In this document: in pieces, positions 10,399 through 28,829 of the stretch | Layout: every line of letters starts with the position of its first letter | How positions within the stretch are numbered: the first letter of the stretch is position 1 | Source of the DNA: Vitrella brassicaformis CCMP3155 | Lineage: Eukaryota; Protista; Chromerida | Assembly: GCA_001179505.1 (NCBI GenBank) | Contig: CDMY01000364.1 | Location: 35,868-99,867, forward strand | DNA length: 64,000 nt | Direction of reading: 5' to 3' | The notes under the pieces: generated by a model | The model's database searches: none | The model's input: only the letters and a program-made list of their open reading frames with translations | Told to the model about the DNA's origin: nothing | Program-made: the position numbers and the translations under genes

Positions 10399-11977
10399 AT
10401 GGAGGCCGAGTTGTCCGCTCGCCAGTTCAGCGCCCAGGCGATTCTCAATCAGCTGCACGTGCCCGTGACGGCCATCGGCGACGCCATAAGCCAACTGCAT
10501 GCCCAGATCCGCCAAGCAGACGACGCCGCCCAGCGAGAGAGGCAGACGCACGGCGCCTCGGACCCATCAGCAGCGTCGCCCGATGACGTGCTGCTGCTCA
10601 ATGTGGGCGGCAGCGAGTGGCGAGTGAAGCGGCAGCACATGACTCAAGGAGAAGGCGTGGAGGGGACTCTGTTGGCGGCGCTGTTCTCGGGCTGCTGGGA
10701 CAACCGATTCATCAAGGACGACAAACAGCGGGCGTTCATCGACATCTACCCGGAGGCCTTCAAGACCATCCACACGGCCATATTGGATACCGCCACCCTC
10801 CTCCAGGCGGGCAAGGCGGCGTCGATTGTCACGCTGCTCGACGAGGCATCCCAGCGGAACTACACCGGTAAGGGGCATGAAGGCGACAGCGCACTCATCC
10901 TGTCCTCTCACTCTGTCTCTGGCTGGCCGTGGTGTAGGTCGTCATGGCTTCTGGATCAAGTTGCTGCTGTCGCCACTGGACAAGGCGGTCTCAGCGGCCC
11001 CTCCCAGTGGCGTCACTGAGCCGCGCCTGTCCGCCACGGACAGCCCTGCCGTGATGGGCGACGCCGTCAAGACGCTCGAGGCCATCATGAAGACATTCAC
11101 CAAGGAGAAGGCCCGGCTGGAGGGCCAGCTGCGGGCGGCACAAGAGCGACGTGACAACCTCGACAAAGAGATACAGGTGACCCACACAGACAGAGCCAGG
11201 GGATGTGGATCGGTGCTGTGTGTGGTTCACAGGCGGTGAGTCCCTTTCTGCTGCCTCTGAGTGGCGGTGACCCCATCCGGTCAGTCGACGTGTGCGGCCA
11301 GGTCATATCGACCACTCAGTCGACTGTCGATGAGATGAGCGACGAGCTGCGGAATCGATTCGACCTGTGAGCATCGACCCATGCACCGAAGCACACAGTG
11401 ACAGCGATGCCCTATCGAGGATGGCTGTGTGTGTCTTTAGGTGGCCGCGGCCGGTTGAGGTGGTGCAGCCCGACCACATCAGCCGTATGGTCGATCACTA
11501 CCGCCGCAGACGTCTCGGCGCGTCGGCCGCCGACATGGCTCCGGTGCTGAGGATGGACAAGACTACCAAGCAGAATGCCTTCGATGTCAACGCAGCCGTG
11601 TACGGCGTCATCAGGAAACGCAGATGGAGAGCCGCGCAGGAAGGCTGACCTCGCCGTCTCTCTGTCTATGTTTTTCCCTTTGCAGTGCTGACTTCACTGT
11701 GATGCCATCTGGTGCTCGGTATCGCATCGTCACGGAGGGCACCGGCAGAGTGCCCACACTCAACGACACCGTCAAGTTCTACGAGATCTGGTGGCGTGAT
11801 CGATTCGACGGCCGGGACAAACGCTACGACCTCCGTGGGGCGGTGTATCGTGTGTCTGATCTGTATGGGTGGGAGCGCGAGGCGTTGCTGTCGATGCGGG
11901 AGGGCGAGGTGAGGCAAATCATCCCGCCACCCGGGTTTGTCCGCTACGTTGAGCTGCGTTTGGTCAGCATAGAGTAG
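10399..11977 (+). CDS. KCTD-type BTB + coiled coil + degenerate second BTB + FKBP-like domain (copy 1; last splice donor mutated)
   Basis: LLLNVGGSEWRVKRQHMTQGEGVEGTLLAALFSGCWD...FIDIYPEAF. Exons 10399-10867, 10938-11176, ~11232-11366, ~11441-11611, ~11687-11977. The donor before the FKBP exon reads ag|gaaacgc, versus ag|gtacgc in copy 2 and ag|gtctgc in copy 3. Confidence 0.8.
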
Positions 11978-12429
11978 GAGAGAGTCCACACACACGCATG
12001 TGGGGGCGGCTGTGTGTCACACACTCATGTGTGTGGCCGGGGGCTCTTCCCTTATTGCCTGGCTGACTGTGTGCCTCGGGTGTCTGTCTGTCATTGGCCA
12101 CTCACAGCACTTGTGGGTGTCACGTCTGCTGCTCGGCCGTGGGTTTATTCCTGTCTGCCGTGCTGCAAAGAGAAGAGCCCTTTTCTCTCCTCTCTCCCCC
12201 TCTCTCTCTCTCTCTCTCTCTGCGTGTGTGTGTGTGTGTGTGGCTGCTTTTATTCAACTCGAATGCATGGCTGTCTGATCCGATGCAGTCTTGCTGAAGG
12301 GCGTGGGCGGGTTCTTTGTGTGCGTGGTGTATATGAGTGGGTGTGCGTGGGGTGAGGGAAGGGACACTTCACGTCGAGGTCAGGTTCTTGGCGATTTAAT
12401 GAGTGCCACACACCACATTTTTCGGTGAG

Positions 12430-12504
12430 GGTGAGGTGCGGCGGGTCATCCTGCCTACAGTGGAAAGAAGATATGTCGAGTATAGGCTGGTGTCCATCCT
12501 GTGA
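12430..12504 (+). pseudogene. Isolated C-terminal fragment of an FKBP-like domain
   Basis: GEVRRVILPTVERRYVEYRLVSIL*. The upstream sequence is not FKBP-like and has stops. Confidence 0.7.
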
Positions 12505-13090
12505 GCTCTCTGCTCGTGGGTGTGGCGACAGTGCGTGTGTGGGAGGTGGTGAGTGCTGTCTGCCTTCATTCATTCATTCAGGCCACCTATGCGTTTATGT
12601 ATTGTGGCCATCGATGTGACATGTCGTTCTCGTGTGTGTCTATGTATTGTGTTTCACACTGACGTGATGACTCGGTGGGTCTAATGTTTGTGCTTATCAT
12701 AACGGACAAATTGGCTCGTTGTCACATACGTCACAATCAACCCATCGCCGTCCGACCCGCCACCCAGCCACACTCCACGCTGAAGAACTGTCTGACACCC
12801 CTACACACACCGGTCCATCCATCGCCTACATCTGCACACAAGCATCAGATATACGCGCACAATTGCGAAAGTGACAGTAGCCAGTCAGTCGACGGCACGC
12901 AGAGGTCAGTAAAGATAAGACAGCTAACCGGAAGGCCAGAACAACCTACAGACGCTCCTGCATCCATCCTTGCATTCACCCATCAGCGTCACTCCCTTTG
13001 CCCGCCCTCGGGCTCCTCTGCTGCCCGATAAATCGACGAGTCAGTCAGGCACATTCACTGAGATCGATGCCTTCCATCTCACACTCAATC

Positions 13091-14836
13091 TCACTCTCTC
13101 AGAACCGCCAGCAGCCTGCACTCCGGAACCGGGCCTTCCTTCTATCGTAGCTCAATCTGGCCGGGACAATGACCCGCCGCACCTCACCCACACGCATGTC
13201 AGTGAGGGTCTCCTGCCACCACTCAGCACAGTCAGACCCACGCCACTCCACCCCACGCTCCTCGACTATCTTCTCTTGTCCGTAGAAGTCGTCACGCCAG
13301 TCGATGTAGTCGACCTTGACCCACTGGTCACGTGTCGGTTTGGGTCCATTGCCCGCCGGCGGCCGCACCACTTGGTGATAGGCGCCAGAGGGGTACAGAG
13401 TGGATCCTTCGTGGCTGCTGTCGTTATTGGGCGCCATCGTAGCTGGTGGTGGTGGTGGTGGTGGGCCGAAGCCCACAGGAATCCTGGCAAAGACAATACC
13501 AAAGAGCACCGCCCACACATAAAGTGAATGCTGTGAGGCACATCGACGTCCGCAAGTGTCAATGCCCCGACTCATATGATGTCCAATAGCCGCATCTCGA
13601 TGTAGGCATCCTTGCCAGTGGTGCTAAAGGATGCCGGCAGGATGACCCGCCGCACCTCGCCAACACGCATGTCAGTCCACATCTCCTGGAGCCACTCACG
13701 TACATCAGACAGACCGAACTCCAGCCCACTGCCCTCCCCTCTCTTGTCCTGGCCGTCAAAGTCGTCAGACCACTCGATAATGTCGGCCTTTATCCGCTGA
13801 TCACGGGTCGGTGTGGGACCGCTGCCCTCCTGCACCACCCAAGACAACACGCCCGTCGACCGCCTCCTGCTGCCATCGCTGGCCGCCGCTTCTTCTCTTG
13901 CTAGTGCTGGCGGTGCTGCTGCTGCTGCTGCTGACGGTGGTGGTGGTGGTGGTGGCCGCTCGGAACCGACAGAACTCCTGACAAGAAAATACCAAAGAGC
14001 AATGCGCACATATGAATGAGCCCCGTGGCGCACACCAATCCTCACACGTGTGTGAATGTGCCCGACTCACCGGATGTCCACCAGCCTGTACTCGAGATAT
14101 CTCTCCTTAAAGTTTCCGTTGCCTGGCACGAATACGCGCCGCACCTCACCCACACGCATGTCAGTGAGGACCTCCTGCTCCCACTCAGCCCAGTAAGACA
14201 CACGACCCACCACCCCACCGAGATCATATTCCTTGTCTTGTCCGTCGAAGTTATCACGCCACTCGATGATGTCGACCGTGACATTCTGTTCATACGTCGG
14301 TTCAGGCCCACTGCCCTCCTTGACCACTTGATAGTAGGCGCCAGACGGCATCCGTGTGAAGCCGGCGGGAGTGCTGGTAAAGACAACACCAAAGAGCACC
14401 GCCCACACATAAAGTGGATGCCGTGAGGCACGTGTGAATGTACCCCGACTCACAGGATGTCCAAAAGCCGCAACTCGTTGTAAGCATCCTTGTCAGTGGT
14501 GCTAAATGGCGTCGGGACGATGACCCGCCGCACCTCACCAACACGCATGTCAGTGAGCACCTCGTGTTGCCACAGACCTCGAGCACACGGACGATCCACC
14601 TCCCCCCGCCTCACGCACACGTTGTCTCCGTCGAAGTCGTCAGCCCACTGGATCCAGTCGAACTTGACGCGTTGGTCACCTGTCGGTTTTGGCCCACTGC
14701 CCGGCTGCACCACTTCAATCAGATAGTACGCGCCAGACGGCATCTGTCTGAAGCTCACAGGAGTCCTGGCAAAGAAAACACCAAAGAGGAGAGGATGAGC
14801 AACACCCACATGCACACCATGTGAGTGCCGTGCCAC
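13091..14836 (-). repeat. Tandem array of four intron+exon units (~390-475 bp)
   Basis: A related intron sequence recurs before each FKBP-like exon: donor gtgagtcggg, then cactttatgtgtgggcggtgctctttggt...ccag before the acceptor (least similar in the first unit). Confidence 0.85.
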
Positions 14837-15756
14837 TTGTGCGTGTCTCTCACTCCTCGTCCATAATGCCGATCAACCGCAGCTGACGGTACCAGCCTCT
14901 ATAGCCGTCTGGCACTTTGATTTGCCTGATCTCCCCCTCCCTCATTGACAGCACCGCCTCACGCCACCAATCACGCTCATCAGACACACGAGCGACCACC
15001 CCACGGTGATCGTAGTAAATGAACTGGCCGTCGAATCCATCACGCCACTCGATGACGTCGTACTTGACGCGGTCGTTGGCCGTGGGCGCTCTGCCGCTGC
15101 CCTGTCGCACCACCTTGTGAAGTGCGCCAGACGGGCGCTGAACGAAGCCATCGTCGGCCGTGTTGTCGTCTTTGCCGGCCGCCGCCCCTTCATCTGCCGC
15201 TGGTCTCGCTGCTGGGGTTGGTGCGGGTGCTGGTGGCTGATCGCCTTCCTTATTCTCTTGGCCTTGGTCGATGTCGACAGCCGATCTGACCACCAGCACC
15301 AAGTCGGGGATAAAGCACACCTGTCTGTGTCTGCTTGTTCAGGTCGCTCACTTGTCGTGTTCGATGCAGAACTTGATGTGCGAGTAGAATGACGGCTTGA
15401 TGGCCAACCGCTGGCCATTGACCTCGAACTCATAGCCGCCTTTGACATTCCCATAGACAAAGTGACCATCCAACAGCCCAACAGGTTCTCCACTCATGAC
15501 GGCAACACACCGCCCTGCACAGACACACAGACACAGACACACACAGACACAAACAGTCAGAGTGACGTTCACTTCAGCGTGAGATCTGCATGTGTGTCGG
15601 TGTTGGCTGACGTCCTCTGAGTTCGCTGATGCGTTGGAATAGATTCAGCCGTGATGTGAGCTGGATTTGCGACCTCAGTGGTGTGAGTGGTGGTCGCACA
15701 AACCCATCGACAGCCGCCCAGGGCACCATGAGGACGGCAAACAGCCACACGACCAT
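13091..15756 (-). CDS. Paralog of gene A (gene B): leader + small N-terminal domain + five tandem FKBP-like domains, the last one decayed
   Basis: Leader MVVWLFAVLMVPWAAVDGFVRPP (ATG 15756). Domains lie in ORFs 14850-15320, 14450-14836, 14067-14453, 13572-14045 and 13099-13575. The first four are joined by phase-2 GT-AG introns; the donor before the fifth is AT. Confidence 0.8.
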
Positions 15757-15908
15757 CGTGACAGTCACGACACACGCCCGATTTGTCGCTTGTTCTCTGC
15801 TGTTGATGAATCAAATGCCTCCAGATCGCAGGTGGGAGCTCTTATGGCTGTTCTCCTAGCGGAACGTCGCTTCTACAGAAGGAAAGCACGCGATCGGCCT
15901 GTGGCTCG
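15141..15908. repeat. Segmental duplication, copy 2 (matches 967-1727)
   Basis: Direct sequence comparison by eye. Confidence 0.9.
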
Positions 15909-17138
15909 GAGTCTTCCGTGCGTGAACCGCTCTCCCGTCGGTGAGCCGGAGCACCTCGTAGGTCAACTGATCTCACGGTGAGGCACACTTGCAGATCTTC
16001 ACTAGAATGAATGATTCATCACTGTCCTCTTTTGTGCGTACGCGTAGCTGTGTGTGGAGCATTCGCCCGACCCATGGCGGTGATTGTCTCTCACCCGTCA
16101 CTGCAGCAGAGCTTTGTGCTGTTTCTGGTGGGGCCTCCACCTCCCCAATATCTTCGCCGAGGCTGAATGATCTGACGCGAGTTACCGGACGCGCAACCTC
16201 TCAGCAGCACCCGGTGGGTGGCACTGAATGATGGGTCGATCTGAACGGACGCTGAGCTGCTTTTTGGTATGTGCAATCAATCAGATGTGGCGCATTGGCA
16301 ATGGCTGGCACCGGATGATAAATGCATCGAAGGAGGAGGAGGGTGGAGTGAGTGAGTGAGTGTATTGGTTACTGCTTCTAGTGGGGCGTCGGAACACATG
16401 CATACCAGGCAGAGAGCGGTGTGTGTGTGTGCGTGCATGCGTGTGTGTGTCATGATGTTTTGTGACAACCTCGACAAATCATCGCACAGACTCGCAAGCA
16501 GACACAGATGCTGTCCGTAAAATCGATTCGTTCACGCAATGGGTCTGCACATATCAATGTCCGCACCACACACAGTGACAGAAAGCTGCCAAGAGAGAGA
16601 GAGAGAGAGGGAGGCAGGCCAGACACTCACAAATAGCGTCATCAGTGACCTAGTCAGCGGCGAGCACCCCAAAGTGACAAATGAATACCCTCCTATCTCT
16701 CCGCCCACCCCGTCGTACGACTGTCTGTCTGTGTGTGGGCACCGCAGCCGCACATCGGCACCCGCCCTCCACGGCAGCAGCATATCCACACACATCACCA
16801 CTGCAGTAAGGGGCGTGCGGCATCCATCAACCAAGCCACACAAGGCCGCCCAACTCGTGCCATGACACCATGCACAAAAACGCCAAGGCAGAACGCCACA
16901 AGACAAGAAAAGACAAGACAAGACAAGACAAGACAAGACAGGACAGAACCGCAGCGAGTTATGTGTGAGTATATATAATGATTTTGTACAAGTAAGTATA
17001 TCGGATGTCACCGCAGTGATACAGACAGACAGACAGACAGACAGACGGCCTAGCTATTATGCACATACAGGTATGTATGCTGGTGTGTGTGTCTGTAGAG
17101 AGGGTGCCCCTCGCCCCGTCCATGAGCCCACCGGCCCA

Positions 17139-18082
17139 TCATCCCCGGCTGTTCAATGTGCGTGTGTGTTCCATGTGGATGAGTCGGATCTCGACGTACC
17201 GCTTGGTCTTGCCCAGCCGATGCACACTCGGAGGCACTATCATCCTGCACACAGCAGCACACACACAATACATACATCAACACGCACCACCAACCTTAGC
17301 CACCCACCGACCTGCGTATCTCTCCGACCCGCATGCTGAGGACGGCCTCCCGCTCCCAGGGGAAATACAGGTCACTCACCACCACAGACCAGCCCTACAC
17401 ATAATTGGTTGATAGCCACACACACACACAGACGCACACACCCATAAGTGATGCCATACTCAATCCTCGCCCATCTGTGTGTGTGCGGACATGCCTTCTT
17501 GTGGACCATCTTGTTGCCCTCGAAGTAGTCGTACCTGCACACACAGACAGAGACCACACACGTACGTCTACCCAACATGGGCACACACACGCACGAGCTG
17601 ACCAGACGGTGTAGTCGATCTTGACGGTTTGGTTGAGGTAGAGAGGGAAGGTCCCCTTGCCCATTTGCACTATCTGGAAGCGCACACCCAACACAGATGT
17701 CTGCGGCTGAGCGATGAAGGCCAAATCGTTCTGGTGAGCCGAGGGCAGCTCGTCGGGGATCGACGCCGATAGGCTTGTGGGTGTGCTGGCGCTGCTGCTG
17801 CTGCTGGCGCTGGGCACACCCACATTGCTGAATCAGACAGACAGACAGACAGACAGACAGATCCTCACAACACATGGATGGCTGCATGCGGTGTGTTTGT
17901 GGGCACTTCTTGTGCACTGTGTTGTTGGCGATCTCAATGCCGTCGGGGCACATTATCTGCTTGACATGCTCCTGCCGAATGTGCCGCCGCTGCCCGGCGG
18001 CCACGTAGTAGAAACCGCCGTGTGCGTCAACGAAGGCCTCACGGCCGAAGAACAGACCCACAAACGCCTCTTTGTCTTCCAT
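17139..18082 (-). CDS. Intron-containing FKBP-like domain protein (start uncertain)
   Basis: Exons 17603-17827, 17495-17534, 17312-17394 and 17139-17244 join in phase: GVRFQIVQMGKGTFPLYLNQTVKIDYTVW|YDYFEGNKMVHKK|GWSVVVSDLYFPWEREAVLSMRVGEIRR|MIVPPSVHRLGKTKRYVEIRLIHM. One intron uses a GC donor (aag|gcatgt). Confidence 0.8.
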
Positions 18083-18784
18083 CGCCTTCGCAAGACCATT
18101 CCACCACACACACAGCGCACTCCGTGATGCTATGAATGGTGCATCCTGGGATGAGCTCTTTTCGTCGTTTTCTCACTTGAGGCGGTGTTGTGGGTCTTCT
18201 GTCGTCAAATAACAGCACAGATCTTCGTAAAGGCCAGATCTGCGAGCTCAGGAGAGCTGGCATCTGCGAGCTTGGATGTGGGAGCAGTAAAGAGAGTCAA
18301 AGAGGTCAGTAGGCCGTCAAGGAAGGCGTCAGAGTCACCAGGCAGGCACAGATCTGGAGTCGGATGTCATGCATGTTGCCGTTCTGGTGTGCTGGTGTTG
18401 TGCAGTTTCGTCGAGCGCTGGTAGCTGTAGAGGCGGCCTTTGTGGTTCGAAGCAGACGCCTTCTTGACAGATCACGCGCTGCCACACGCAGAGGTGAACA
18501 GAAAAGGCACACGGGGGCTGCAGCACTCTGTTTGCACGGGGGAGATGCGAATTGATTGTTCGTTTGACCGGTGGCTTTGCAGGCTGGAGTGTCGTCGTGG
18601 TGTCGCGAGGCAGTCAAACAGGTGAACAGCGCTCAAGTGAATGAGTGAATGCAAAGAGGTCGAGCTGTTTGTATGTGGGCTGGCGTGACGGCTGCAGGGT
18701 TGGTTGAGGTCTGATCGATTTGACTCGTGCGCTCGCCAATGATGGATGGCACCGAAGCCGTAAGCAAAGACACATCGCATCAAC

Positions 18785-21700
18785 ATGATCACTTCACCCA
18801 ATGAGCCTGTCTTCCGACACGTACACATGCTGTGTGCAGGCTGCTGCTGCTGCTGCTGCTCTTGTCACTATCGACGTGTCAGGTGACTGCACACGTGATG
18901 GGTGACCGACTGCATGAATGTAAGATTTCTTGTTTGCAGGCACGGACGAGTGGCCTTCAGGCGTGGAGCGCGTTCAGGGGACCGTCATCGACACGGAGCG
19001 GACCTGGCCGCAGCTCAAAAAGGCCATTGCCAACAAGGGAGCAGTCGGCGAAGCACCACCTGGCCTTCTCGAGGACAAATACTACGATGGGAAAGACTAC
19101 TTGTGTCTGAGCCTCCCAGTCAAACAGGTGGGCACCACCAATGGCCACATGGGGCAGTGGCTTGATGTTATCTGTGTATGTCACTTCAAGAGCGTGAGGA
19201 GGTGGTGAAGAACACCACCGTGATTGTAGCTGAGGAGCTAGCGCGCAAGGTGACTGAGGAGAAGATGAAGATCATCATCTACGACATGCTCTCGCGCGAG
19301 GACACCGAGCTGACCGAGACTCAGGAGATCATGGACAGCTCCCACCCTCTCTACAGAAGCGCCTCAGAGCGGGAAAGAGACGGATACGCCTACATGGCTC
19401 TGGCGAAGGACGTCATACCAAGACACACAGCCATCGGTAGGCGACTGACGTCGAGCAAACAATCTGCTTCTCACCTTCCCGTTCTGTGTGGTTGTCTCAG
19501 GCCTGTACGGTGGGCGCCTGGTGGCGACGACGGACAGGCGGTGCAAGCCGGAGAACTACAACCGATTCTACATTTATGGCGTGGATGCCTACCAGACAAA
19601 GAAGGGCAATAACATCTTTCATCTTGATGGCTTCAGATTTAGAAGCGCCGCCGGTCAGTCAGCAGGCAGGCAGGCAGGCAGTAAAGATGGGTAACCTTGT
19701 GACTTGATATGTGTGTGCCTGTGTGGTGTCTCCTCTGTCCAGGGATGATGACCCGCGTGGCATGACGGGCAAGAGCGCCAATGTGGTGGCTCAGCCTTTT
19801 GAGTTGTTCGGCGTCCCTTTCATCTGCCATATTTCACTCAGGGCCATCAACAAGGACGAGGTACTCACACACGACGCCCGCACATGCTTCAAAGGACTGA
19901 CGGTTGATTGGCTCAGGAGGTGCTGGTGGACTATGGGAGGGATTACTTCACAAGTGACGATTGGAGGGCTCAGGAGAAGAAACAGGTGCCTACTTCCAAT
20001 CAATGGCAGCACACATGTGTATATTCTATGTTATCTGCGTCATTCAGTCGCAGCAAGCCATGGAGGAGCTGCGTCGGTTGAGGGACCGACAGCCGTTGCT
20101 ATCTGACGTCAAAGAAGAGGCAGATGGTACGCAGGCGTCGCATTGATACTTAAGACATTGCCAGGCAGATGTGTGTGAATGTGTGTGCAGCGTTGAAAGA
20201 AGGGATGGCCAAGAAAGACGAAGAGATTGCCGCTCTAAAGCAGGAGGTGGAGCAGTTGGCGCAGGTGCAATGTCCCGCCAAGAGGTCACGTGGCGTCGGC
20301 ACCGAAAGTACAGAGGCCCTCCGTCTATAGTCCACCCACGTGTGTGTGCTGATGTCTTGTATTTACGCACGTAGATGTGCTACCCGACGGTGACGCCACC
20401 AGCTCCAAGAAACGACGTCAAGACCAGCACAATGGACCAGCAGCACCAGCAGCAGCAGCAGCCAGCAAGGGCGACAACATTTATGAGGAGTTCAGCGCCC
20501 AGGCGATTTTCAATGAGCTGCACATGCCTGTGACGGCCATCAGTGACGCCATCACCCAGCTGCACGCCCGGATCCGCCAAGCTGACGACGATGCTCAGCG
20601 AGAGAGGCAGAAGCACGGCGCATCGGACCCATCAGCAGCGTCGCCCGATGACATTCTGCTGCTCAATGTGGGCGGCAGCGAGTGGCGAGTGAAGCGGAAC
20701 CACATGACTCAAGGGGAGGGCGTGGAGGGCACTCTGCTGGCGGCGCTGTTCTCGGGCTGCTGGGACGGCCGGCTGGTCAGTCACGACAAACAGCGTGTGT
20801 TCCTCGACATCTGCCCGGAGGCCTTCAAGACCATCCATACGGCCATCCTCAACGCCGCCACCCTCCGCCAGACGGGTAACGCCGCGTCAGTTGCCACGCT
20901 GCTCGACGAGGCATCGAAGCAGAATAGCTACACCGGTAAGGGCCATGAAGGCGACTACACACTCATCCCCTCTTATCACACTTTTCGTTTGTCTGGCCGT
21001 GGTGTAGGTTCCCATGGCTTCTGGATCAAGCTGCTGCTGTCGCCACTGGACAAGGCGGCCTCAGCGGCCCCTCCCGGAGGCGTCGCTGAGCCGCGCCTGT
21101 CCGCCACGGACAGCCCTGCCGCGATGGGCGACGCCGTCAGGACGCTCGAAGCTATCATGAAGGCCATCGTCAAGGAGAAGGCCCGGCTGGAGGGCCAGCT
21201 GCTGGCGGCACAAGGACGACGTGACAAACTCGACAAAGAGATACAGGTGACGAGATGCGCCCAGAGGGAAAGGAGGCGCCTTGATGTGGATCGGTGGCTT
21301 GTGCACCTGGCAGGCCGTCATGCCCTTCCTGGCGCCTCTGAGTGGCGGCGATGCCATTCGGTCTGTCGACGTGTGCGGGAGTCTCATCTCGACGGTGCAG
21401 TCCACCTTGGACGAAATGGGCGACATTGGGGCTTCACAACCGATTCGATATGTAAGTTAAGCCAACCACACACATCATTCAGATGTCCCTCAATACGGGG
21501 TTTCCGTCAGGTGGTCGCGCACACGTGCGGTTGAGGTGGTGCAGCCCGACCACATCTGCCGTATGGTCGATTACTATCGCCGCAAGCGGCTCGGTGCGTC
21601 GGCGGCCGACATGGCTGCGGTGCTCAAGATGGCCAATTCGACAGAGCAGGCGGCCTTCGACATCAACACGGCCATGTACGGCGTTGTCAAGCCCGACACA

Positions 21701-22102
21701 CACACCACACACGGCGCGCAGCAGACCAGGTACGCAGATGGAGAGCAGCGCAGGAAAGCTGCCCTCGCCGTCTATCTGTCATGTTTGTTCCTTTGCAGCG
21801 ACATTGATGGCTTCATTGAGATGCCATCTGGTGTGCGCTATCGCATCGTCACGGAGGGCACCGGCAGAGTGCCGACACTCAACGACCGCGTCAAGACCGA
21901 CACCATTGCGTGGAGTGACGGATTCGACGGCCGGAAGAAGGCATTCGATTACCGTGGGGAGGTGCGTCGTGTGTCTGATTTGGCTGAGTGGTGGCGTAAG
22001 GCGGTGCTGCCGATGAGGGAGGGGGAAGTGAGGCAAATCAAACTGCCACGCGGATATCCTTATCCCCGCTATGTTGAGCTGCGTTTGATCAGCATAGAGT
22101 AG
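18785..22102 (+). CDS. SET-like domain + coiled coil + BTB + degenerate BTB + FKBP-like domain (copy 2; +1 frameshift late in the gene)
   Basis: SET motifs DVIPRHTAIG|LYGGRLV, YIYGVD...FHLDG and HISLRAINKDE|EVLVDYGRDYF. Phase-0 junction 19985|20054, then junctions into the BTB exon (20375-20934). The exon 21314-21451 is 138 nt where phase 2 is needed (extra G in attggggctt). FKBP exon ~21799-22102. Confidence 0.7.
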
Positions 22103-22534
22103 GAGAGAGTTCACACACACGTGGGGGCGGCTGTGTGTGTCACACACTCATGTGTGTGGCCGGGGGCTCCTCCCTCTCTGCCTGGCTGACTGTGTGCCTC
22201 GACATTGTGAGCCACCGAGGGAATGTGCTGTGATTTTCGTTTAGCGCAGCATCGTGTTGTGCGACGTGTGTGCCTGGGGAGCGTGGGTGTTTGTGTGCGT
22301 GTCGCATGTCTTTCACTCTGTCTGCCTGCCTGCCTGCCATGATTGGGTGGGTTTTTCGGTCGGTCGGCCACTCACAGCCACTGTGTGCGGTGCCTGACAC
22401 ACATAATGTCTGTGTTTGCGGTGACCTCGCGCTGAGTTGTTGTGTGTCAACGCATGTCGCAATAGACTCGCATTCACCGCCGACGCAGCCTCACAGAAAA
22501 ACTGCACATGCCCACACTACCAATGTCATCCGCA

Positions 22535-23964
22535 CTATGTCTTCTCGGTTGTGGTGGGCGCGTTGAGCATCGGCTCCCCGTAATACTTCTGATACTCCTC
22601 CGCGTTCACTGACACCCAGGACACACAAGATACGTGTGAGTATTGGACCTGTGTGTGTGTGTGTGTGTGTGTGCTGGTACACAATAACCATGTGCAACCG
22701 TACTTTTGTTTTCGAGTGCGATGACGTCTTTGGCTTTGGCGACTTCGTCGGCCGGCAATGCATCCACCACATCGCCCAAACGATCCCTGACCACATACAC
22801 GCAGCATCACACAGCAGGCACACCAGCACATCCGTGTGTGTGTGACACATGCGCACGGTGTGCAGATGGATGGATGGATGGATGGATACCTGACGGTCTT
22901 GAGCGCTCTGGCGATGAAGTCTGGACGCCAAGACAAAGACGCACAGGTACAAGGCATTCGGTGCGCCAGGCAGCCACGCTTTGTTGCACTGACCTGTTTT
23001 GGTGCGGTCTATGTCGCCCACTTTCAGCGAATTCGCCCTCGGATCGAAATACTCGAGCAGCGTCGTCAAGGAATCGACCGCCTCGCCGCCGGCATTCCGC
23101 ACCTGACGTCGACGGACACGCGTACGTGCGCCAACGTGGTGTGTGGAGGTTTGTCGTGTGTGCACCTGTTGTTGTCTGTCTTGTGGGGCGTACAGCGCTA
23201 GGATCTGAATGTTCTCCTTCAGCCGATAGTTGTCCAACATGTAACTCACAGCCTGATCAGACACACAAACATTCATTCATTCATTCATGCACACCTCACT
23301 GTCCGGGTGTGTGTGTACCCGTACGTACCAGCTTGATGTTGGCTCTCTGTGCATCTCTGAATTTGCCGCTGCGAATCAGACGTTCCTCCTGATTCGTCGC
23401 TGCACACGCATCAAGCAGGCGCCCACACACAGACAGACGCACATGTGCATCTGCTTGTATGAGTCTGTTGGCAACGCACCTTCAATCACCCGCAGAATGC
23501 TCACAAGCGGCTTCTGAATGGGCGGCAGGCCAGTAGAGGAGTCCGCATAGGATGACGAGAGGGGCAAGAGCAGCCCAGCCATGATGCCCAGTGCCCACAT
23601 CCCTCCATCACCCAGGTTCTCTCTCCGTGTGTTTGTCACACTCATGTGCAAAGCAGATGGGCTCGGTTGCCTGTAGGCAGACACAGAGATAGATGCTTGT
23701 GTGTCTGTATGTGACGCAATTGTGGAGAGCTCACCTTGTCGATGGTCTTCGAAAGCTGGTCTGCGTCTGTGTCTGTGTGTGTCTGGAGAAGGGAGAAACC
23801 ACACAAACAGTCAATGTCTGTGTTCCCACATGCAACAGCATATGTGTGTGTGTACCGTTCTCTCCATCCATCTGTCCTCGACGGCAGCACAAAGCCGATC
23901 ACAGAGCAGCACAAGAGGTGAACAGTCAGCAGCAACAGGATGAAAGACGGCGGAAGATCTCTCA
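22535..23964 (-). CDS. Thylakoid-lumen-type helical protein, PsbQ-like (inferred)
   Basis: Signal peptide MRDLPPSFILLLLTVHLLCCSVIGF, a transit-like region, then a twin-Arg signal TRRE...WALGIMAGLLLPLSSSYA. Mature part ATNQEERLIRSGKFRDAQRANIKLAVSYMLDNYRL...SLTTLLEYFDP. The PsbQ-like label comes from recalled algal homologs. Confidence 0.65.
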
Positions 23965-24101
23965 TTCTTCTATGCCCGATGGTCATTTGCTTCACTGTGC
24001 AGACCCGAAAACAGCGAGAGGAAGGCAGAAAGGCGACTCGGAAGCGGCGCTGACGATCGCCGATACAGCTCGCAGTGATTGGAGAAAGCAAAAGCGAAAC
24101 G

Positions 24102-25772
24102 ATGGCAGCCATGCTCCTGTGTTTGCTTGTCGCGACCACATCTGTCGGTGTGCTTGGCTTCGTTCCGCCGTCTGTCACGCCAACCAGAGCAAAGCAAGGT
24201 GAGAGCACCGATAGATCCGCACGCAGACAGTCACTGCCACATAGCGCTTTCTTGTCTGCTGCTGCTTGTCAGGCATGTGGCCTTTGAGTGTCCCTCGGGC
24301 CTCTCGGCAGCCCGCCACATCTGCATCTCCATCGAGTGTCGTCGAAGACGCACTCGGCGTGGTGAATGGCGAAAGCAACATACGATACACGTGAGGCTCT
24401 CAACAGAGAGAGAGAGGGCAGCACACGTAGAAATCACCTTTCTTTTTGTGCGGTCAGTGACTACGTCGAGACTGCATCTTTCCCCCCTGAGAGCTCTGTG
24501 CTGTCCACTGCTGAGGTTTCTGAAGAGGTCGGCAGACCCCAAAAACACACACTGCTCCCTCTCAGAGATCCGAGTCATGTCATGTGATGTTGCTTGTGAT
24601 CGATGCAGTCAGCAGCACCCGCGGCACCGAAGAGGCGGCGGCCATTGTCCAAGGATCCGCAGCTGATTGTGGAGGGGGACTCGACACAAGTGACGCCATA
24701 CCAGCAGCTCGTCACCTACGGTACTCTGGCTCTCGCACTGGCCGCTATCGCACAAGTGAGAAAGAAAGAAGGACACACGCAGACGGCAGCTGTATTGTGT
24801 GTGGGCGATGGTGTGTTCAGGCATTGGTGTCTGATGCTTCCAATCCTGCGCTGATGTCGCTGATGGTGCCTTTCGCATTGCTGTTCGGTGACCTCTTCAG
24901 CGGAGTCTTCCACTGGTATGAGCGCGTCCACCTTTTATTCTTTTGCGGTGTTGGACATATTCCATTGATGTCGGTGTGTGTCTGTCTGTGTGCATCAGGG
25001 CTGTTGACAACTACGGCAACAAGAACACTCCCGTGTTCGGCAGTGTGATAGAGGGCTTTCAGGGACACCACAAGTACCCATGGACCATCACATACCGGTG
25101 AGCATGGACACAGAGGGGCGAGAGAAAGATACCATCTGCTTTGCGGGATGTGTGTGTGATGCAGTCCGTTTGCGAACAACGTGTACAAGATCTGTTATGG
25201 TGTACTGCTCATCATGGCCACCACATTCATCCTGCAGGCACCACCTGGTACCCTCACACACGCACACACGTGCCGTTTCATGGATGATCTTTTTGCTGCG
25301 TGCGTGTGTGTGTCCATATCGTCAGCTGTCCGTGTGTTCATGACGGTGTTTGGGTTGTCCCAAGTGATGGCTCAGGAGTTCCATAAGTACAGCCACATGA
25401 CCAAACCACCCATCATCGTCCAAAGGTGCGAACGTCCTCACCGGAATACACTCGTGGGCTCACACATCCATGTGTGTGTGTTGTCGATGATTGCAGGTTG
25501 CAGGGCATGGGGCTGATGCTGCCAAGGAAAGAGCACGGGCTCCACCACTCAGAGCCTTTCGAAGGTCAGCCATGAACATGACTACACACAAGCATGTCAG
25601 TACATGTATGTGGTGTCGTGTGGTGTGATGTGTGCAGGTCACTATTCAATTTTGTTTGGGTGGTTCAACCCGCTGCTCGACCACTCACAGGTCTTCAGGC
25701 TGATGGAGAGGGCCATCTACAAGTGGAACGGTCAGTTACCACACAGGCGCGTTCCCATCCATCGCACACACG

Positions 25773-25819
<47 letters not shown>

Positions 25820-25919
25820 TGTATCTTATCTACCAGGTCACATGCCGAATAGCTGGAAACTCGACGAGAGGCTGAGACAGGAGCAGGTTGACATGATCGA
25901 GGGCTCACAGAGGACATGA
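24102..25919 (+). CDS. FAD4/TMEM189(Kua)/CarF-family lipid desaturase with plastid-type leader
   Basis: Leader MAAMLLCLLVATTSVGVLGFVPP. His motifs DLFSGVFHWAVDNYG, FQGHHKYPW, QEFHKYSH and EHGLHH, plus HYSILFGWFNPLLD, spread over GT-AG exons. Confidence 0.9.
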
Positions 25920-27142
25920 CGTGCCGTCCCGTGTGATGTGTGTGTGTGTTGGTGGTCGGGGGGCGGGGCTGAGTGTACAGCGATTTTCCACCATCCCGTC
26001 TGTCAGTTGACGTGTACATAGAGACGTGGGATCAGGGAGGTTGGCATGAGTGTTCAGTGTTGAGTGTTGATACTTGGCTGGATGCATTGCCCTTGCAATC
26101 AGTCAGTCTGTGTGGGGAGCGATTGTAGTGGACCTCGACGCTCAAACGCAGTGGAGTGACGGCCCTTCTGCCTGTGATCAGCGGCAGGCAGAGAGAACGT
26201 CGCTTGAGCGCGTTTGAGCGCCGAGAGGACACCAGAAACACTACCCCTTGTCCGGATAACTCTCACTATCGTTTTGTCATCGAGAGAGACAGTTTTGTCA
26301 CCCGCTCTCACCATTTTGACTTCCGCATGCGCACAATCGTGTGAGTGTCGATAGAAAGAGCCGACCGACCAAGTGCGTGTATGGGTTCTCTTGGCACTAC
26401 GATCAGCTTGGTGGACGTCTTCTCTGCCTGTGATTGACAGCAGGCATGAAATCCGTCTGTCGAGGGGATCTGAGCACCGAGAGAGCACCAGACACGCACA
26501 TGCACACACCAGTGTATGTCTGAAGAGAGAGTTTTGTCTTGACACCGTTCTGCCTCGCTGTCGAATACAATGGCCTTGCCTCTCCGCTCGCCTGTCTTTC
26601 ATGCATTCACACCGGTCTTGCCTTCATTACTTGACAGGTTTCTCGGTGTCTGCGATATCGATGTGTGTTTTTCGGTGTGCTGCTGTGACTGCAGTGAGTG
26701 GACAGCCAGCCTGTTGGTTGACGGTGCTGATCACGTGAATCATGCTCAGTAAGAGTGGGTCAGAAGGGAAGGACGCGTTCATTGGCAGAGCACACATAGT
26801 TTTCGCGCACCGCACGTCCACACCATGAGACAGCACAACACACCGCTCACATGCTGAATCGACTACTACAGGGACACATACACACACACGCGAACGAGGA
26901 CAAGACAGCCACAGAGCCATAGATGCCACAGACGGACCACGCACACACAGGAGGCATAGTATGCGCCTACGTGTATGTGTCCTCACACCAAGACATAAAA
27001 AACACTTAGACTCTCTGGCACACAGGCCGCCATGGACAGCACACTCACTCCTTCACTCAGCACCGGGGCAGACACTCACCCAGGCACACATGAGTGTGAC
27101 GAACACAGCCGCCCCCACATGTGTGTCTGTGTGCACTCTCTC

Positions 27143-28829
27143 CTACTCTATGCTGATCAGCCGCAGCTGAACGTAGCGGCCATATCCGGCTGGTAAAATA
27201 ATTTGCCTGACCTCCCCCTCACTCATCGACAGCACCGCCTCACGCAGCCACCCATACAGACCAGACACACGACCCACCCGCCCACGGTCATCGTAGTATT
27301 TGTCCTGGCCGTCGAATGCATCACACCACGTTATCCAGTCGTACTTGACGCGGTCGTTGTTGTAATTTGTCGGCACTCTGCCGGTGCCGTCCGTGACGAT
27401 GCGATACCGATTACCTAACGGGGTCACAGTGAAGCCATCACCGCTGCAAAAAGGACAAACAAGACAGATGGATGGCGAGGTCATCTTTCCTGCGCTGCTC
27501 TCCATCTGCAGACCTGATGACGCCGTACATGGCCGCGTTGACATCAAAGGCCCTCTGCGCCTGCTCGTCGGTCAGCTGCAGCGGCACACTCGCTTCTTTA
27601 GGTGAGGCGCCGTGTCGTTGACGGCGGTGGTGGTCGATCATTCGGCTCATGTGGTCGGGCGGCACGTCGTTAACGGAGCCGCCCCACCTGAAATGGTTGG
27701 CACACAGGACACGATGAGCACCCGTGTCTGATTTTCTTGTTGTTGGTTTTGTAATGTGATCTCATCACTCACACGGATGCACTGTTGCGCCGCTTGAGTG
27801 CCATATCCTCCGGCATCGCGTCGATGGTCGACTGACACGTCGAGAGGACTTCTCCACACACATCGACAGAGCGAACGGGGTCATCGCCGTCGATGGGCGC
27901 GAGGAATGAACTCACAGCCTGGCAATACAAACGACGAGCGAATGAATCCTCGGACGGTTTCCCTTTGTGAGTGCGTGTCGCTCACCTCTATTTCGGTCAT
28001 GAGCTGCTCGTATCGCATTTTCTCTGTGTGCAGCTCCCCTTCGAGTTGTCGGTTCTGGTCAGCATGGGCCTCGAGGACGTTGTTCAGTGCCACGATGAGA
28101 CCCCTGGCTGCGTCGGGGATGCCCTCTGCAGTCACTGATGGCTCCTTGCCGGCCGGCTGAGCGGTGTCGTCACTTGCGGGTGTCTTGTGGACGGGCGAGA
28201 GCAGCTTCTTGATCCAGAAGTCATGCAAACCTACATAAACACACAGACAGCTGAAAAGGTGTACACGCGCCCCGTCGTATGTGTCTGTGATCTGTGTGAA
28301 TACCTTTGTTTCCACGCTTGTCAGCCTCGGTCAGTAGGCGGGAGACCGAAGGCACACTTGCCCCGCCCTTTCGAGCGGCCTGCTGGACGGTCCTTGCCTC
28401 CAGGATGGCCGTGTGGATGGTGTTGAAGGCCTCCGAGTCCATGTTGAGGAACACCCGCTGCTTGTCGTCCTTGATGAATCGGTTGTCGAACTTGCCGGAG
28501 AAGAGCGCCGCCAGCAGAGTGCCCTCCACGCCCTCCCCTTGTGTCATGTGGTTGCGCATCACCCGCCGCTCCGTGCCGCCCACATTCAGCTGCAGCATGT
28601 CATTTGCCGACGCCGCCGGTGGGTCAGCGATGCAGTGGCTCTCCTTGAGCTGAGCCGTGCTCTCCCTTTCGACCGTGATTTGTTGCTTCAGTGGGTTGAG
28701 GCTCTCACAGAGGATGACGGCCGGTCTGTGGAAGCTGTCGAGGACGACACGCTCCGGACATTGGGCGGTCAGGCTGTCGCTGTCCACCACCGCCGGAATG
28801 GACCAGTCTGCGGCGATAGATCTGTCCAT
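27143..28829 (-). CDS. BTB + coiled coil + degenerate BTB + FKBP-like domain (copy 3; appears intact)
   Basis: MLQLNVGGTERRVMRNHMTQGEGVEGTLLAALFSGKFDNRF. Same exon layout as copies 1 and 2; the last two junctions are canonical and phase-compatible. Ends RYVQLRLISIE*. Confidence 0.85.

What the first reader, a model, noticed from the sequence alone, without database searches (positions are those of the whole stretch)
10399..28829. Three BTB-coiled coil-BTB-like-FKBP-like fusion genes: candidate Cullin-3 adaptors with a variable substrate head
SEEN: the same exon layout and shared 3' flank (gagtaggagagagt...gtgggggcggctgtgt) at 10399-11977, 20375-22102 and, inverted, 27143-28829. The BTB exons of copies 1 and 2 are very similar while their FKBP-like heads differ at pocket positions. 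KNOWN: KCTD-type BTB domains oligomerise, and many recruit Cullin-3 with a C-terminal domain choosing the substrate. INFERENCE: a BTB-FKBP architecture, which I do not recognise from other organisms, could act as a diversified E3 substrate receptor.
Basis: partly seen in the sequence, partly recalled or inferred. Interest (0 to 1): 0.78.

Follow-up and report, generated by a model that had tools for sequence, protein, structure and literature searches.

The report
Vitrella BTB-BTB-FKBP-like adaptor gene family
The window holds three members of a gene family known so far only from the alga Vitrella. The family joins two BTB oligomerisation domains to a stripped-down, fast-evolving and swappable FKBP-fold domain, so these are probably interchangeable target-recognition subunits of ubiquitin ligases; that role is untested, and two of the three copies carry defects.

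Summary
Three paralogous five-exon genes lie at 10399-11977 (+), 20375-22102 (+) and 28829-27143 (-), each followed by the same 3' flank. The organism is Vitrella brassicaformis CCMP3155.

Each gene encodes:
- an N-terminal helix
- a KCTD/T1-type BTB domain
- a coiled coil
- a second, degenerate T1-type BTB domain
- a degenerate FKBP-fold head

AlphaFold2 and PDB comparison were run on a neighbouring paralog. The head gave Z 12-14 against FKBPs, and both BTB domains gave Z 8-9 against KCTD, K13 and Kv T1 structures.

The genome holds at least 39 scaffold loci. A spliced transcript of one paralog joins the BTB and FKBP parts. Among the best 150 of 1,299 hits in a 1.84-billion-protein library, only Vitrella proteins have both parts.

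The head, together with intron 4 and the 3' flank, is a swappable cassette, and the same head also sits on RING-finger proteins. Most canonical pocket residues are lost. Codons on the former ligand face evolve at omega about 1.7, against 0.57 for the rest of the head.

- Copy 1 has GA instead of GT at the intron-4 donor.
- Copy 2 has a +1 frameshift in exon 3.
- Copy 2 has no in-frame ATG of its own and is annotated as a SET fusion.

Cullin-3 binding remains untested. The scan has already noted this family on other DNA of the same genome.

The parts
10399..10867 (+). Copy 1 exon 1: N-terminal helix and first T1/KCTD-type BTB domain (ends in phase 1)
   Evidence: Sequence reading. Pfam BTB_2 E 0.0026, 18.5 bits, below the 21.4-bit cut-off.
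10938..11176 (+). Copy 1 exon 2: linker and coiled coil
   Evidence: Only weak matches to coiled-coil Pfam families. In the paralog model this region is a long helix, residues 181-227.
11233..11366 (+). Copy 1 exon 3: first half of the second, degenerate T1-type BTB domain
   Evidence: The paralog model matches Kv4.3 T1 and the KCTD15 BTB domain at Z about 8.
11441..11614 (+). Copy 1 exon 4: second half of the second BTB domain. It is followed by a non-canonical GA donor at 11615-11616.
   Evidence: The 17 other paralogs with a readable junction have GT at this donor. An in-phase cryptic GT lies at 11600.
11686..11977 (+). Copy 1 exon 5: degenerate FKBP-fold head, with stop codon TAG at 11975-11977
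   Evidence: A head profile (A3) led by this exon hits the Legionella MIP FKBP domain in the PDB at E 1.2e-7. No Pfam hit for the exon alone.
11978..12078 (+). Shared 3' flank of copy 1
   Evidence: 84% identical to 22103-22201 (repeat D12). The motif is found three times in the window against 0.01 expected.
18785..20125 (+). SET-like exons that the database model P0021 splices onto copy 2 (approximate extent)
   Evidence: tblastn of P0021 places residues 74-165 at 19169-19438 and residues 279-305 at 20045-20125. The source names it a SET domain-containing protein.
20375..20935 (+). Copy 2 first BTB exon. It has no in-frame ATG and opens behind an AG acceptor at 20373-20374.
   Evidence: Pfam BTB_2 E 0.013.
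21008..21246 (+). Copy 2 exon 2: linker and coiled coil
21314..21451 (+). Copy 2 exon 3, with a +1 frameshift (GGGG at 21428-21431)
   Evidence: Alignment of 20 paralogs. The exon is 138 nt, so it ends in phase 0, while exon 4 needs phase 2.
21511..21729 (+). Copy 2 exon 4: second half of the second BTB domain plus linker
21799..22102 (+). Copy 2 exon 5: FKBP-fold head and stop codon
22103..22201 (+). Shared 3' flank of copy 2
28304..28829 (-). Copy 3 exon 1: ATG at 28829, N-terminal helix and first BTB domain
   Evidence: Pfam BTB_2 E 0.012.
27986..28230 (-). Copy 3 exon 2: linker and coiled coil
27773..27918 (-). Copy 3 exon 3: first half of the second BTB domain
27514..27687 (-). Copy 3 exon 4: second half of the second BTB domain, followed by a canonical GT donor
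27143..27443 (-). Copy 3 exon 5: FKBP-fold head and stop codon
27079..27142 (-). Shared 3' flank of copy 3
   Evidence: inverted repeats I1, I17, I20.

Best explanation
SHOWN. The three loci belong to a family found so far only in Vitrella, with at least 39 scaffold loci. The proteins have this order: N-terminal helix, KCTD/T1-type BTB, coiled coil, second degenerate T1-type BTB, short linker, degenerate FKBP-fold head. The head keeps the FKBP fold and the pocket-floor residues equivalent to F36, D37 and W59 of FKBP12. It has lost or varies the equivalents of Y26, F46, I56 and F99. It lacks the 80s loop with Y82 and has a shortened 50s loop. The head is exchanged between scaffolds as a cassette made of intron 4, exon 5 and the 3' flank. 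Its former ligand face accumulates amino-acid changes faster than silent changes.

INFERRED. The two BTB domains and the coiled coil build an oligomer that displays several heads. The heads act as non-catalytic binding modules of differing specificity. The assembly delivers bound targets to a cullin-RING ubiquitin ligase through the first BTB domain, in the manner of KCTD and MATH-BTB adaptors.

Within this window, only copy 3 is intact as assembled. Copy 1 has a defective intron-4 donor. Copy 2 has a frameshift and depends on upstream SET-like exons. Both may be decaying or differently spliced members of a birth-and-death family.

The anatomy is about 0.95 certain. The stated confidence refers to the ubiquitin-ligase adaptor mechanism.
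For: Family and organism:
- Paralogs of 380-482 aa are named Vitrella brassicaformis CCMP3155 by their sources.
- The genome has 39 loci matching exon 4 at E <= 1e-5 and 162 exon matches to P0001.

Fold:
- AlphaFold2 of the neighbouring paralog P0001 with a 76-sequence alignment gave pLDDT 90.9.
- The head matches FKBP25, FKBP51, MIP and others at Z 12-14 and rmsd about 2 A.
- BTB1 matches K13 at Z 9.1, KCTD16 at 8.2 and the KCTD7 chain of the KCTD7-Cul3 complex at 7.9.
- BTB2 matches Kv4.3 T1 at Z 8.0 and KCTD15 at 7.9.
- Foldseek gives E 9e-9 against MIP.

Sequence homology:
- The head profile led by the window's own exons hits MIP at E 1.2e-7.
- The family profile hits genuine FKBP_C proteins.
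- Relatives P0037, P0090 and P0095 pass the Pfam BTB_2 cut-off, and P0095 has two BTB_2 stretches.

Transcript:
- Intron-free contig L001 matches the exons of G000:C748 in separate blocks: the first three at 100% identity, and the block carrying the second half of BTB2, the head and the 3' end at 94%. It encodes P0012, which has all four parts.

Cassette behaviour:
- Copy 1 and L002 are 85-98% identical through exons 1-4 and 42-58% from the end of exon 4 onward.
- Copy 1 and copy 3 show the reverse pattern.

Selection:
- Whole-exon dN/dS is 0.28-0.38 for the BTB exons and 0.65 for the head.
- 25 ligand-side codons chosen in advance give omega 1.73 (bootstrap 0.96-3.03), against 0.57 for the rest. 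None of 5000 random codon sets reached 1.73.
- 6 of 10 pocket-equivalent positions are among the 20 most variable of 96 (p 0.005).

Link to ubiquitin ligases:
- The same head is fused to RING fingers in P0046 and P0054, both encoded in this genome.
- Three cullin loci are present.
Against: - There is no test of cullin binding or of oligomeric state. Only monomer models were available.
- Several T1-type BTB proteins (Kv channels, KCTD1/15, KCTD12/16) do not use Cul3; this is established knowledge.
- Cullin orthology is unresolved. Exon pieces of two loci have human Cul3 as best PDB hit, but only by small margins: 31 vs 27 bits, and 24.7 bits.
- The window's own exons miss the Pfam cut-offs for BTB_2 and FKBP_C.
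- Structure evidence comes from paralog P0001, not from the window's genes.
- Omega > 1 rests on a crude Nei-Gojobori count, in loops with indels, in a family with gene conversion. The lower bootstrap bound is 0.96.
- Copies 1 and 2 carry lesions.
- No transcript of the three window copies could be retrieved.
Confidence: 0.45

Rival explanations
1. Cullin-independent oligomeric scaffold. The BTB-coiled coil-BTB core forms tetramers or pentamers that cluster FKBP-fold binding modules on some cellular target such as a channel, receptor, transcription factor or organelle surface. This would resemble KCTD12/16 on GABA-B receptors or KCTD1/15 on AP-2, with no ubiquitination involved.
For: - BTB1 and BTB2 match non-Cul3 T1 domains (Kv4.3 T1, KCTD16, KCTD15) as well as they match Cul3-binding KCTDs.
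- The nearest relatives of the scaffold carry TLDc, DUSP-like or SAM tails, which are not classical substrate-receptor domains.
- The head also occurs in tandem arrays and on CBM20 and SET proteins, so it is not specific to ligases.
Against: - The head is also fused to RING fingers.
- The expansion with a fast-evolving recognition face resembles known families of ligase adaptors.
- Cullin genes are present.
Confidence: 0.3
2. Oligomeric prolyl isomerase or chaperone. The heads are active FKBP-type isomerases held on an oligomerisation stalk, like the dimeric MIP and FkpA proteins.
For: - The top Foldseek hits are full-length MIP and FkpA, which combine a helical stalk with an FKBP domain.
- The equivalents of F36, D37 and W59 are conserved.
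Against: - The equivalents of Y26, F46, I56 and F99 are among the most variable columns.
- The 80s loop with Y82 is deleted and the 50s loop is shortened.
- Pfam FKBP_C is below its cut-off.
- An omega of 1.7 on the ligand side does not fit a conserved active site.
Confidence: 0.07
3. For this window specifically, copies 1 and 2 are pseudogenes or truncated products of a birth-and-death family, and only copy 3 makes the full four-part protein.
For: - Copy 1 has a GA donor where the 17 other paralogs with a readable junction have GT.
- Copy 2 has a +1 frameshift relative to its closest paralog and no start codon of its own.
- The database model of copy 2 lacks the core of BTB2.
- No database protein at least 90% identical to copy 1 was returned.
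Against: - Both lesions are single-base events in a draft assembly, one of them in a G run, and could be sequencing errors.
- An in-phase cryptic GT donor lies 15 nt upstream in copy 1.
- All other exons of both copies remain open.
Confidence: 0.4

Closest known systems
KCTD family (T1-type BTB proteins, several of them Cullin-3 substrate adaptors, e.g. KCTD5, KCTD7, KCTD17, SHKBP1)
   Same: Both have a short T1-type BTB fold (Z 7.7-8.2 to KCTD16, KCTD9, KCTD7 and KCTD17). In both, a BTB domain at the N-terminal end is followed by a different C-terminal domain. Sources name the paralogs 'potassium channel tetramerisation-type BTB domain-containing'.
   Different: This family has two T1-type BTB domains separated by a coiled coil and a C-terminal FKBP-fold head. 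The window exons miss the Pfam BTB_2 cut-off. Oligomeric state and Cul3 binding are unknown.
Expanded MATH-BTB families of nematodes and grasses (own knowledge: Thomas 2006; Gingerich et al. 2007)
   Same: Both are lineage-specific expansions of clustered BTB genes with a conserved BTB part and a recognition domain whose binding face evolves fast.
   Different: Here the recognition domain is an FKBP fold rather than MATH and lies C-terminal. The BTB is T1-type, not the long dimeric type with a 3-box. The head is also exchanged as an exon cassette.
BTB_2-coiled coil-BTB_2-TLDc proteins (Vitrella P0037, P0071, P0094 and P0131; environmental P0095 and P0115; the diatom protein P0145 has BTB_2, TLDc and SAM in a different order)
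   Same: These are homologous over the whole scaffold: BTB1, coiled coil and BTB2 (profile positions about 14-340).
   Different: The C-terminal domain is TLDc, not the FKBP-fold head. These relatives occur outside Vitrella. Piridium P0050 has the scaffold without a recognisable head.
FKBP-type prolyl isomerases (FKBP12, MIP, FkpA)
   Same: The fold is shared (Z 12-14, rmsd about 2 A, 16-26% identity). Homology is detectable at profile level. The equivalents of F36, D37 and W59 are kept.
   Different: The 80s loop with Y82 is deleted and the 50s loop is shortened. The equivalents of Y26, F46, I56 and F99 are hypervariable. The heads are probably not catalytic.
Plasmodium Kelch13 (coiled coil, KCTD-like BTB, Kelch propeller)
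   Same: K13 is the best structural match of BTB1 (Z 9.1) and the only BTB hit of the family profile in the PDB by sequence (E 0.079). K13 comes from a related lineage, and its BTB was described as KCTD-like (PMC6650413).
   Different: K13 has one BTB and a Kelch propeller, is single-copy and is highly conserved. This family has two BTB domains and an FKBP-fold head, and is expanded and diversifying.

Membership tests
BTB_2 / KCTD-type (T1) BTB domain, PF02214 | Match to the Pfam BTB_2 model above the gathering score | tested here: not met
   The window's exon 1 of copies 1, 2 and 3 scored 18.5, 16.3 and 16.4 bits against a cut-off of 21.4. Family relatives P0037 (24.7), P0090 (25.3) and P0095 (64.5, two stretches) do pass.
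BTB_2 / KCTD-type (T1) BTB domain, PF02214 | T1/BTB core fold | tested here: met
   In the AlphaFold2 model of paralog P0001 (pLDDT 90.9), residues 47-156 match K13 BTB at Z 9.1 and KCTD16, 9, 7 and 17 at Z 7.7-8.2. Residues 234-333 match Kv4.3 T1 at Z 8.0 and KCTD15 at Z 7.9. This was tested on the paralog, not on the window's own joined protein.
BTB_2 / KCTD-type (T1) BTB domain, PF02214 | Homo-oligomerisation (tetramer or pentamer) | not testable with these tools
   Only single-chain prediction was available.
Cullin-3 substrate adaptor (CRL3 receptor) | BTB domain binds the N-terminal domain of Cullin-3 | not testable with these tools
   No multimer prediction and no binding data. The match to the KCTD7 chain of the KCTD7-Cul3 complex (Z 7.9) shows shared fold only.
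Cullin-3 substrate adaptor (CRL3 receptor) | A Cullin-3 orthologue exists in the organism | tested here: inconclusive
   Three cullin loci were found: C69, C603 and C224. An exon piece of C603 hits human Cul3 best (31.3 bits, against 27 for Cul4A). A C69 piece hits only Cul3, weakly (24.7 bits). C224 hits Cul4A. Other pieces gave nothing.
Cullin-3 substrate adaptor (CRL3 receptor) | A separate domain that binds substrates | tested here: inconclusive
   The head is a distinct domain with a diversifying former ligand face and also occurs on RING proteins. No ligand is known.
FKBP-type peptidyl-prolyl isomerase, PF00254 | Match to the Pfam FKBP_C model above the gathering score | tested here: not met
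   The window's three head exons gave no hit. Paralogs scored 12-16 bits against a cut-off of 21.1.
FKBP-type peptidyl-prolyl isomerase, PF00254 | FKBP fold and profile-level homology | tested here: met
   Z 12-14 and rmsd 1.8-2.4 A over about 100 residues. Foldseek E 9e-9. Head profile A3, led by the window's exons, hits MIP at E 1.2e-7. The family profile hits genuine multi-FKBP proteins.
FKBP-type peptidyl-prolyl isomerase, PF00254 | Conserved aromatic ligand pocket (FKBP12 Y26, F36, D37, F46, V55, I56, W59, Y82, F99) | tested here: not met
   Only the equivalents of F36, D37 and W59 are conserved. The equivalents of Y26, F46, I56 and F99 have 2.3-3.4 bits of entropy. The V55 equivalent is mostly Asp. 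The 80s loop with Y82 is absent.

The most novel reading that the evidence does not exclude
Vitrella uses a stripped-down FKBP fold as a hypervariable recognition domain that is swapped as a cassette. It plugs this domain into both BTB and RING ubiquitin-ligase parts. The result would be an immune-like repertoire that recognises changing targets, such as viral, bacterial or host-derived proteins in the coral holobiont, and sends them for ubiquitination. This would be a new class of substrate receptor and a new use of the FKBP fold.
Probability: 0.2. Interest if true: 0.85.

Novelty: new variant of a known kind. Interest (0 to 1): 0.6.

Why it matters
BTB proteins with a fast-evolving recognition domain are a recurring way for eukaryotes to build large sets of ubiquitin-ligase receptors. 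Here the recognition domain would be an FKBP fold that has given up its enzyme pocket, which has not been described in the papers I could search. The family is large, clustered and found so far only in Vitrella, and it evolves by cassette exchange and amino-acid diversification. Vitrella is a photosynthetic relative of the malaria and Toxoplasma parasites, and the best structural match of the first BTB domain is the malaria protein K13. The family therefore offers a tractable case for two questions: how new receptor repertoires arise, and what KCTD-like BTB domains do in this lineage.

Tried and rejected
- Pfam on single exons gave only sub-threshold BTB_2 hits and no FKBP_C hit.
- The first AlphaFold2 run, with 14 close paralogs, left both BTB regions below pLDDT 50. 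A 76-sequence alignment fixed this.
- I looked for transcripts of the window's own copies with the search for related loci and with an exact DNA pattern in metagenome contigs. Both came back blank.
- The look-up of encoding contigs has no record of P0021.
- The ESM Atlas gave no usable hit.
- Assigning the three cullin loci to Cul3 from exon pieces against the PDB gave small margins or nothing.
- hhalign of BTB1 against BTB2 gave an in-register but weak match (E 0.005, probability 7%). I rely instead on the fold match and on the two Pfam BTB_2 stretches in P0095.
- I rejected the ATG at 20375 as copy 2's start, because it is out of frame.
- I rejected the heads as active isomerases, because the pocket is lost.
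- I rejected the family as dead DNA, because 22 of 23 genes examined keep all five parts (no head was found in L019), the scaffold is under purifying selection and paralog transcripts exist.
- Literature searches for BTB with FKBP, Vitrella with FKBP and Vitrella with cullin found nothing on this family.
- Not done, by instruction: the exons of the window's genes were never joined into a spliced protein for a search or a fold. They were searched exon by exon by reference, and the database paralog P0001 served as proxy for the full-length fold.

Full report
ORGANISM AND PLACE. The window is G000:C364:35868-99867, the end of a 99,867-base contig. Database relatives of its proteins are named Vitrella brassicaformis CCMP3155 by their sources. 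The DNA is eukaryotic, about 57% G+C, with short introns.

THE OBSERVATION. The repeat finder pairs copy 1 with copy 2 at 89% identity over the first two exons, 83% over exon 4 and 79% over the last exon. It pairs both with an inverted copy 3 at 77-79%. I read the exon borders from the sequence.
- Copy 1 (+): 10399-10867, 10938-11176, 11233-11366, 11441-11614, 11686-11977.
- Copy 2 (+): 20375-20935, 21008-21246, 21314-21451, 21511-21729, 21799-22102.
- Copy 3 (-): 28829-28304, 28230-27986, 27918-27773, 27687-27514, 27443-27143.

Intron phases are the same in the three copies (1, 0, 2, 2), except at the lesion in copy 2 described below. The flank motif GTGGGGGCGGCTGTGT occurs three times in the window, once behind each stop codon, against 0.01 expected. 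So the layout, the coordinates of copies 1 and 3 and the shared flank are confirmed.

1. The ATG at 20375 is not in the BTB reading frame, and copy 2 has no in-frame start. 20375 follows an AG acceptor. The database model for this gene, P0021 = CEM05790.1 (800 aa, 'SET domain-containing protein'), splices upstream SET-like exons onto it.
2. Copy 2 exon 3 has GGGG at 21428-21431, where its closest paralog (L016) has GGG. The exon is therefore 138 nt and ends in phase 0, while exon 4 needs phase 2. Read straight through, the frame stops early in exon 4. The database model escapes by using an earlier donor. That removes about 29 residues forming the first strands and helix of the second BTB domain.
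3. Copy 1 has GA at the intron-4 donor (11615-11616), whereas the 17 other paralogs with a readable junction, including copies 2 and 3, have GT. An in-phase cryptic GT lies at 11600, but using it would remove the conserved Tyr-Gly.

Each lesion is a single-base event in a draft assembly and could be an error. As assembled, only copy 3 is canonical.

WHAT THE PROTEINS ARE. I searched them exon by exon by reference and used database paralogs for full-length work. A word search with the open frame covering copy 1 exon 1 returned 20 proteins, most of them 380-482 aa Vitrella paralogs. When aligned, they show a highly conserved N-terminal two-thirds and a variable last 100 residues. The closest, P0001, is encoded 3.2 kb upstream of the window on the same contig.

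AlphaFold2 on P0001 with 14 close paralogs was confident only for the last domain. With 76 sequences, including distant relatives, mean pLDDT was 90.9 and pTM 0.70. The model contains:
- helix, residues 2-36
- alpha/beta domain, residues 50-161
- long helix, residues 181-227
- second alpha/beta domain, residues 237-320
- flexible linker
- beta-rich domain, residues 345-435

An all-against-representatives structural search gave these matches:

| Model region | Best matches | Z |
|---|---|---|
| 334-436 | FKBP25, FKBP51, MIP-type and plant FKBPs (rmsd 1.8-2.4 A, about 100 aligned, 16-26% identity) | 12-14 |
| 47-156 | P. falciparum K13 BTB | 9.1 |
| 47-156 | KCTD16 | 8.2 |
| 47-156 | KCTD9 | 8.0 |
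| 47-156 | KCTD7 chain of the Cul3 complex | 7.9 |
| 234-333 | Kv4.3 T1 | 8.0 |
| 234-333 | KCTD15 | 7.9 |
| 234-333 | Elongin C | 7.8 |

Foldseek agrees for the head, at E 9e-9.

Sequence evidence:
- The window's exon 1 copies give Pfam BTB_2 E 0.003-0.013, below the cut-off.
- Family relatives pass the cut-off, and P0095 has two BTB_2 stretches. So the second domain is a degenerate BTB_2.
- The three head exons give no Pfam hit on their own. A profile of 20 genomic head exons, led by the window's three, hits the FKBP domain of Legionella MIP at E 1.2e-7.
- The whole-family profile hits genuine multi-domain FKBPs in the 1.84-billion-protein library.

IS THE HEAD STILL AN FKBP ENZYME? I aligned the heads with canonical FKBP domains (the HMMER alignments agree within one residue). 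The equivalents of FKBP12 F36, D37 and W59 are conserved. The equivalents of Y26, F46, I56, R57 and F99 are among the most variable columns, at 2.3-3.4 bits, and the V55 equivalent is mostly Asp. The 50s loop is 4-5 residues shorter. The 80s loop with Y82, H87 and I90/I91 is replaced by 2-12 variable residues. The numbering and the roles of these residues are established knowledge about FKBP12. Since the defining pocket is not kept, I do not file the head as a prolyl isomerase. It is an FKBP-fold domain.

SIZE AND SPREAD OF THE FAMILY. Exon 4, the most specific scaffold piece, finds 39 loci in the genome at E <= 1e-5. All 46 candidates were scored, and about 30 hits are strong. The loci cluster on contigs C364, C748, C485, C1000 and others. 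Of 23 genes I fetched or read, 22 have all five parts in the same order, and no head was found in L019.

In the exhaustive profile search, 1,299 proteins reached E <= 0.001, and the best 150 are listed. Every listed protein with both BTB and FKBP-like parts traces to Vitrella, either as NCBI records, as MMETSP transcripts or as a JGI sample whose contig matches this genome.

The scaffold without the head is older and wider. It carries TLDc or DUSP-like tails in Vitrella. It occurs in Piridium (P0050) and in marine environmental sequences (the P0132 cluster, P0095, P0115). A diatom protein combines BTB_2, TLDc and SAM. I cannot exclude a weak BTB+FKBP combination beyond the 150 rows shown.

ARE BTB AND FKBP JOINED IN mRNA? 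Yes, for a paralog. JGI contig L001 (2,664 nt) carries an uninterrupted 471-codon frame (P0012) with all four parts. It matches G000:C748 in separate blocks: the first three at 100% identity, and the block carrying the second half of BTB2, the head and the 3' end at 94%. The blocks are separated by 60-80 nt, so it is a spliced transcript. MMETSP transcripts P0025 and P0042 point the same way. For the three window copies I could not retrieve transcripts, and this remains open.

HOW THE FAMILY EVOLVES. Sliding-window identity shows two histories within one gene.
- Copy 1 and the upstream paralog L002 are 85-98% identical from exon 1 to exon 4, introns included. Identity drops to 42-58% from the end of exon 4 through the head and flank.
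- Copy 1 and copy 3 are about 40-50% identical over most of the scaffold. They are 70-87% identical from intron 4 to about 60 nt past the stop codon.

Median pairwise dN/dS by exon:

| Exon | Part | dN/dS |
|---|---|---|
| 1 | BTB1 | 0.38 |
| 2 | coiled coil and linker | 0.61 |
| 3 | BTB2, first half | 0.28 |
| 4 | BTB2, second half | 0.30 |
| 5 | head | 0.65 |

In very close pairs, head dN is about ten times scaffold dN.

I chose 25 head codons in advance from the canonical FKBP ligand contacts and the 40s, 50s and 80s loops. Pooled over eight independent paralog pairs, they give omega 1.73 (bootstrap 95% interval 0.96-3.03), against 0.57 (0.41-0.78) for the other 71 codons. The ratio of non-synonymous to synonymous changes differs at Fisher p 2.6e-6. 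None of 5,000 random 25-codon sets reached the observed omega. Six of ten pocket-equivalent positions are among the 20 most variable of 96 (p 0.005). This is a crude count in an indel-rich, recombining family. I read it as probable, not proven, diversifying selection.

LINK TO UBIQUITIN LIGASES. The same head sits at the C-terminus of RING-finger proteins P0046 and P0054, whose RING models score above their Pfam cut-offs. Both are encoded in this genome at 99% identity for their main exons. The head also occurs on a SET protein (P0124) and a CBM20 protein (P0075), and in tandem arrays. Two arrays lie in this window: P0026 at about 13100-15756 and P0028 at about 1-1572. At least 47 head loci reach E <= 1e-20.

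The genome has three cullin loci. Exon pieces of two have human Cul3 as best PDB hit, but by small margins, so Cul3 orthology is not settled. No tool here could test BTB-cullin contact or oligomeric state.

MOST LIKELY MECHANISM. Shown: the architecture, the loss of the enzyme pocket, the cassette exchange and the fast evolution of the former ligand face. Inferred: an oligomeric BTB-coiled coil-BTB core displays several non-catalytic FKBP-fold binding modules and hands their targets to a cullin-RING ligase. I put this at about 0.45. A cullin-independent clustering scaffold is at about 0.3, and an active oligomeric isomerase at about 0.07. Separately, I give about 0.4 that copies 1 and 2 of this window do not make the full protein.

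COMPARISON AND NOVELTY. The closest relatives in function are KCTD adaptors and the expanded MATH-BTB families. The closest in descent are the BTB_2-coiled coil-BTB_2-TLDc proteins. For the first BTB domain, the best structural match is K13 of Plasmodium, whose BTB was already described as KCTD-like (PMC6650413). I found no paper on a BTB-FKBP family or on FKBP expansion in Vitrella, and the chromerid genome paper mentions neither BTB nor FKBP. The proteins are in public databases but uncharacterised, with only the BTB part named. I rate this a new variant of a known kind.

EARLIER NOTES OF THIS SCAN. The family was noted before on other contigs of this genome, and follow-ups reached similar readings. 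I re-tested the main points here independently.

Noticed in passing
window 30734-31459 (-), with a 392-aa ORF at 29325-30500 (-): There is a reverse-transcriptase ORF (Pfam RVT_1, E 7.7e-27). A retroelement therefore lies about 500 nt upstream of copy 3's start codon. I only observed it.
   Followed up: no
window about 13100-15756 (-) and about 1-1572 (-): Two genes carry tandem arrays of four FKBP-like heads. Database proteins P0026 (586 aa) and P0028 (605 aa) map here. P0059 maps to 13102-13437.
   Followed up: partly
window 17142-17829 (-): A single-head FKBP-like gene with an intron lies here (P0091, 209 aa).
   Followed up: no
window about 10550-10760 vs 28680-28470: Copies 1 and 3 are 77-88% identical at the DNA level only over the BTB1 core, within a 40-50% background. 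This is either a gene-conversion tract or very strong constraint.
   Followed up: partly
G000:C364:31063-32649 (-), 3.2 kb before the window start: A fourth family member (P0001) lies on the same contig. Its scaffold is nearly identical to copy 1, but it carries a head of the other subfamily.
   Followed up: yes
G000:C1000:116227-117169 and G000:C1000:180260-181380: These loci encode RING-finger proteins with the same FKBP-like head (P0046, P0054).
   Followed up: partly
G000 contigs C69 (89.8-91.8 kb), C603 (95-98 kb), C224 (31.5-33.2 kb): The genome has three cullin genes with many small exons. Which of them, if any, is Cullin-3 is unresolved.
   Followed up: partly
window 12192-12250 and 25764-25822: (CT)n(GT)n compound microsatellites lie downstream of copy 1 and between copies 2 and 3.
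   Followed up: no
family introns 1-3 in all three copies: The acceptor AG is followed by G at introns 1-3. The only non-GT donor seen among the paralogs examined is the GA in copy 1.
   Followed up: partly
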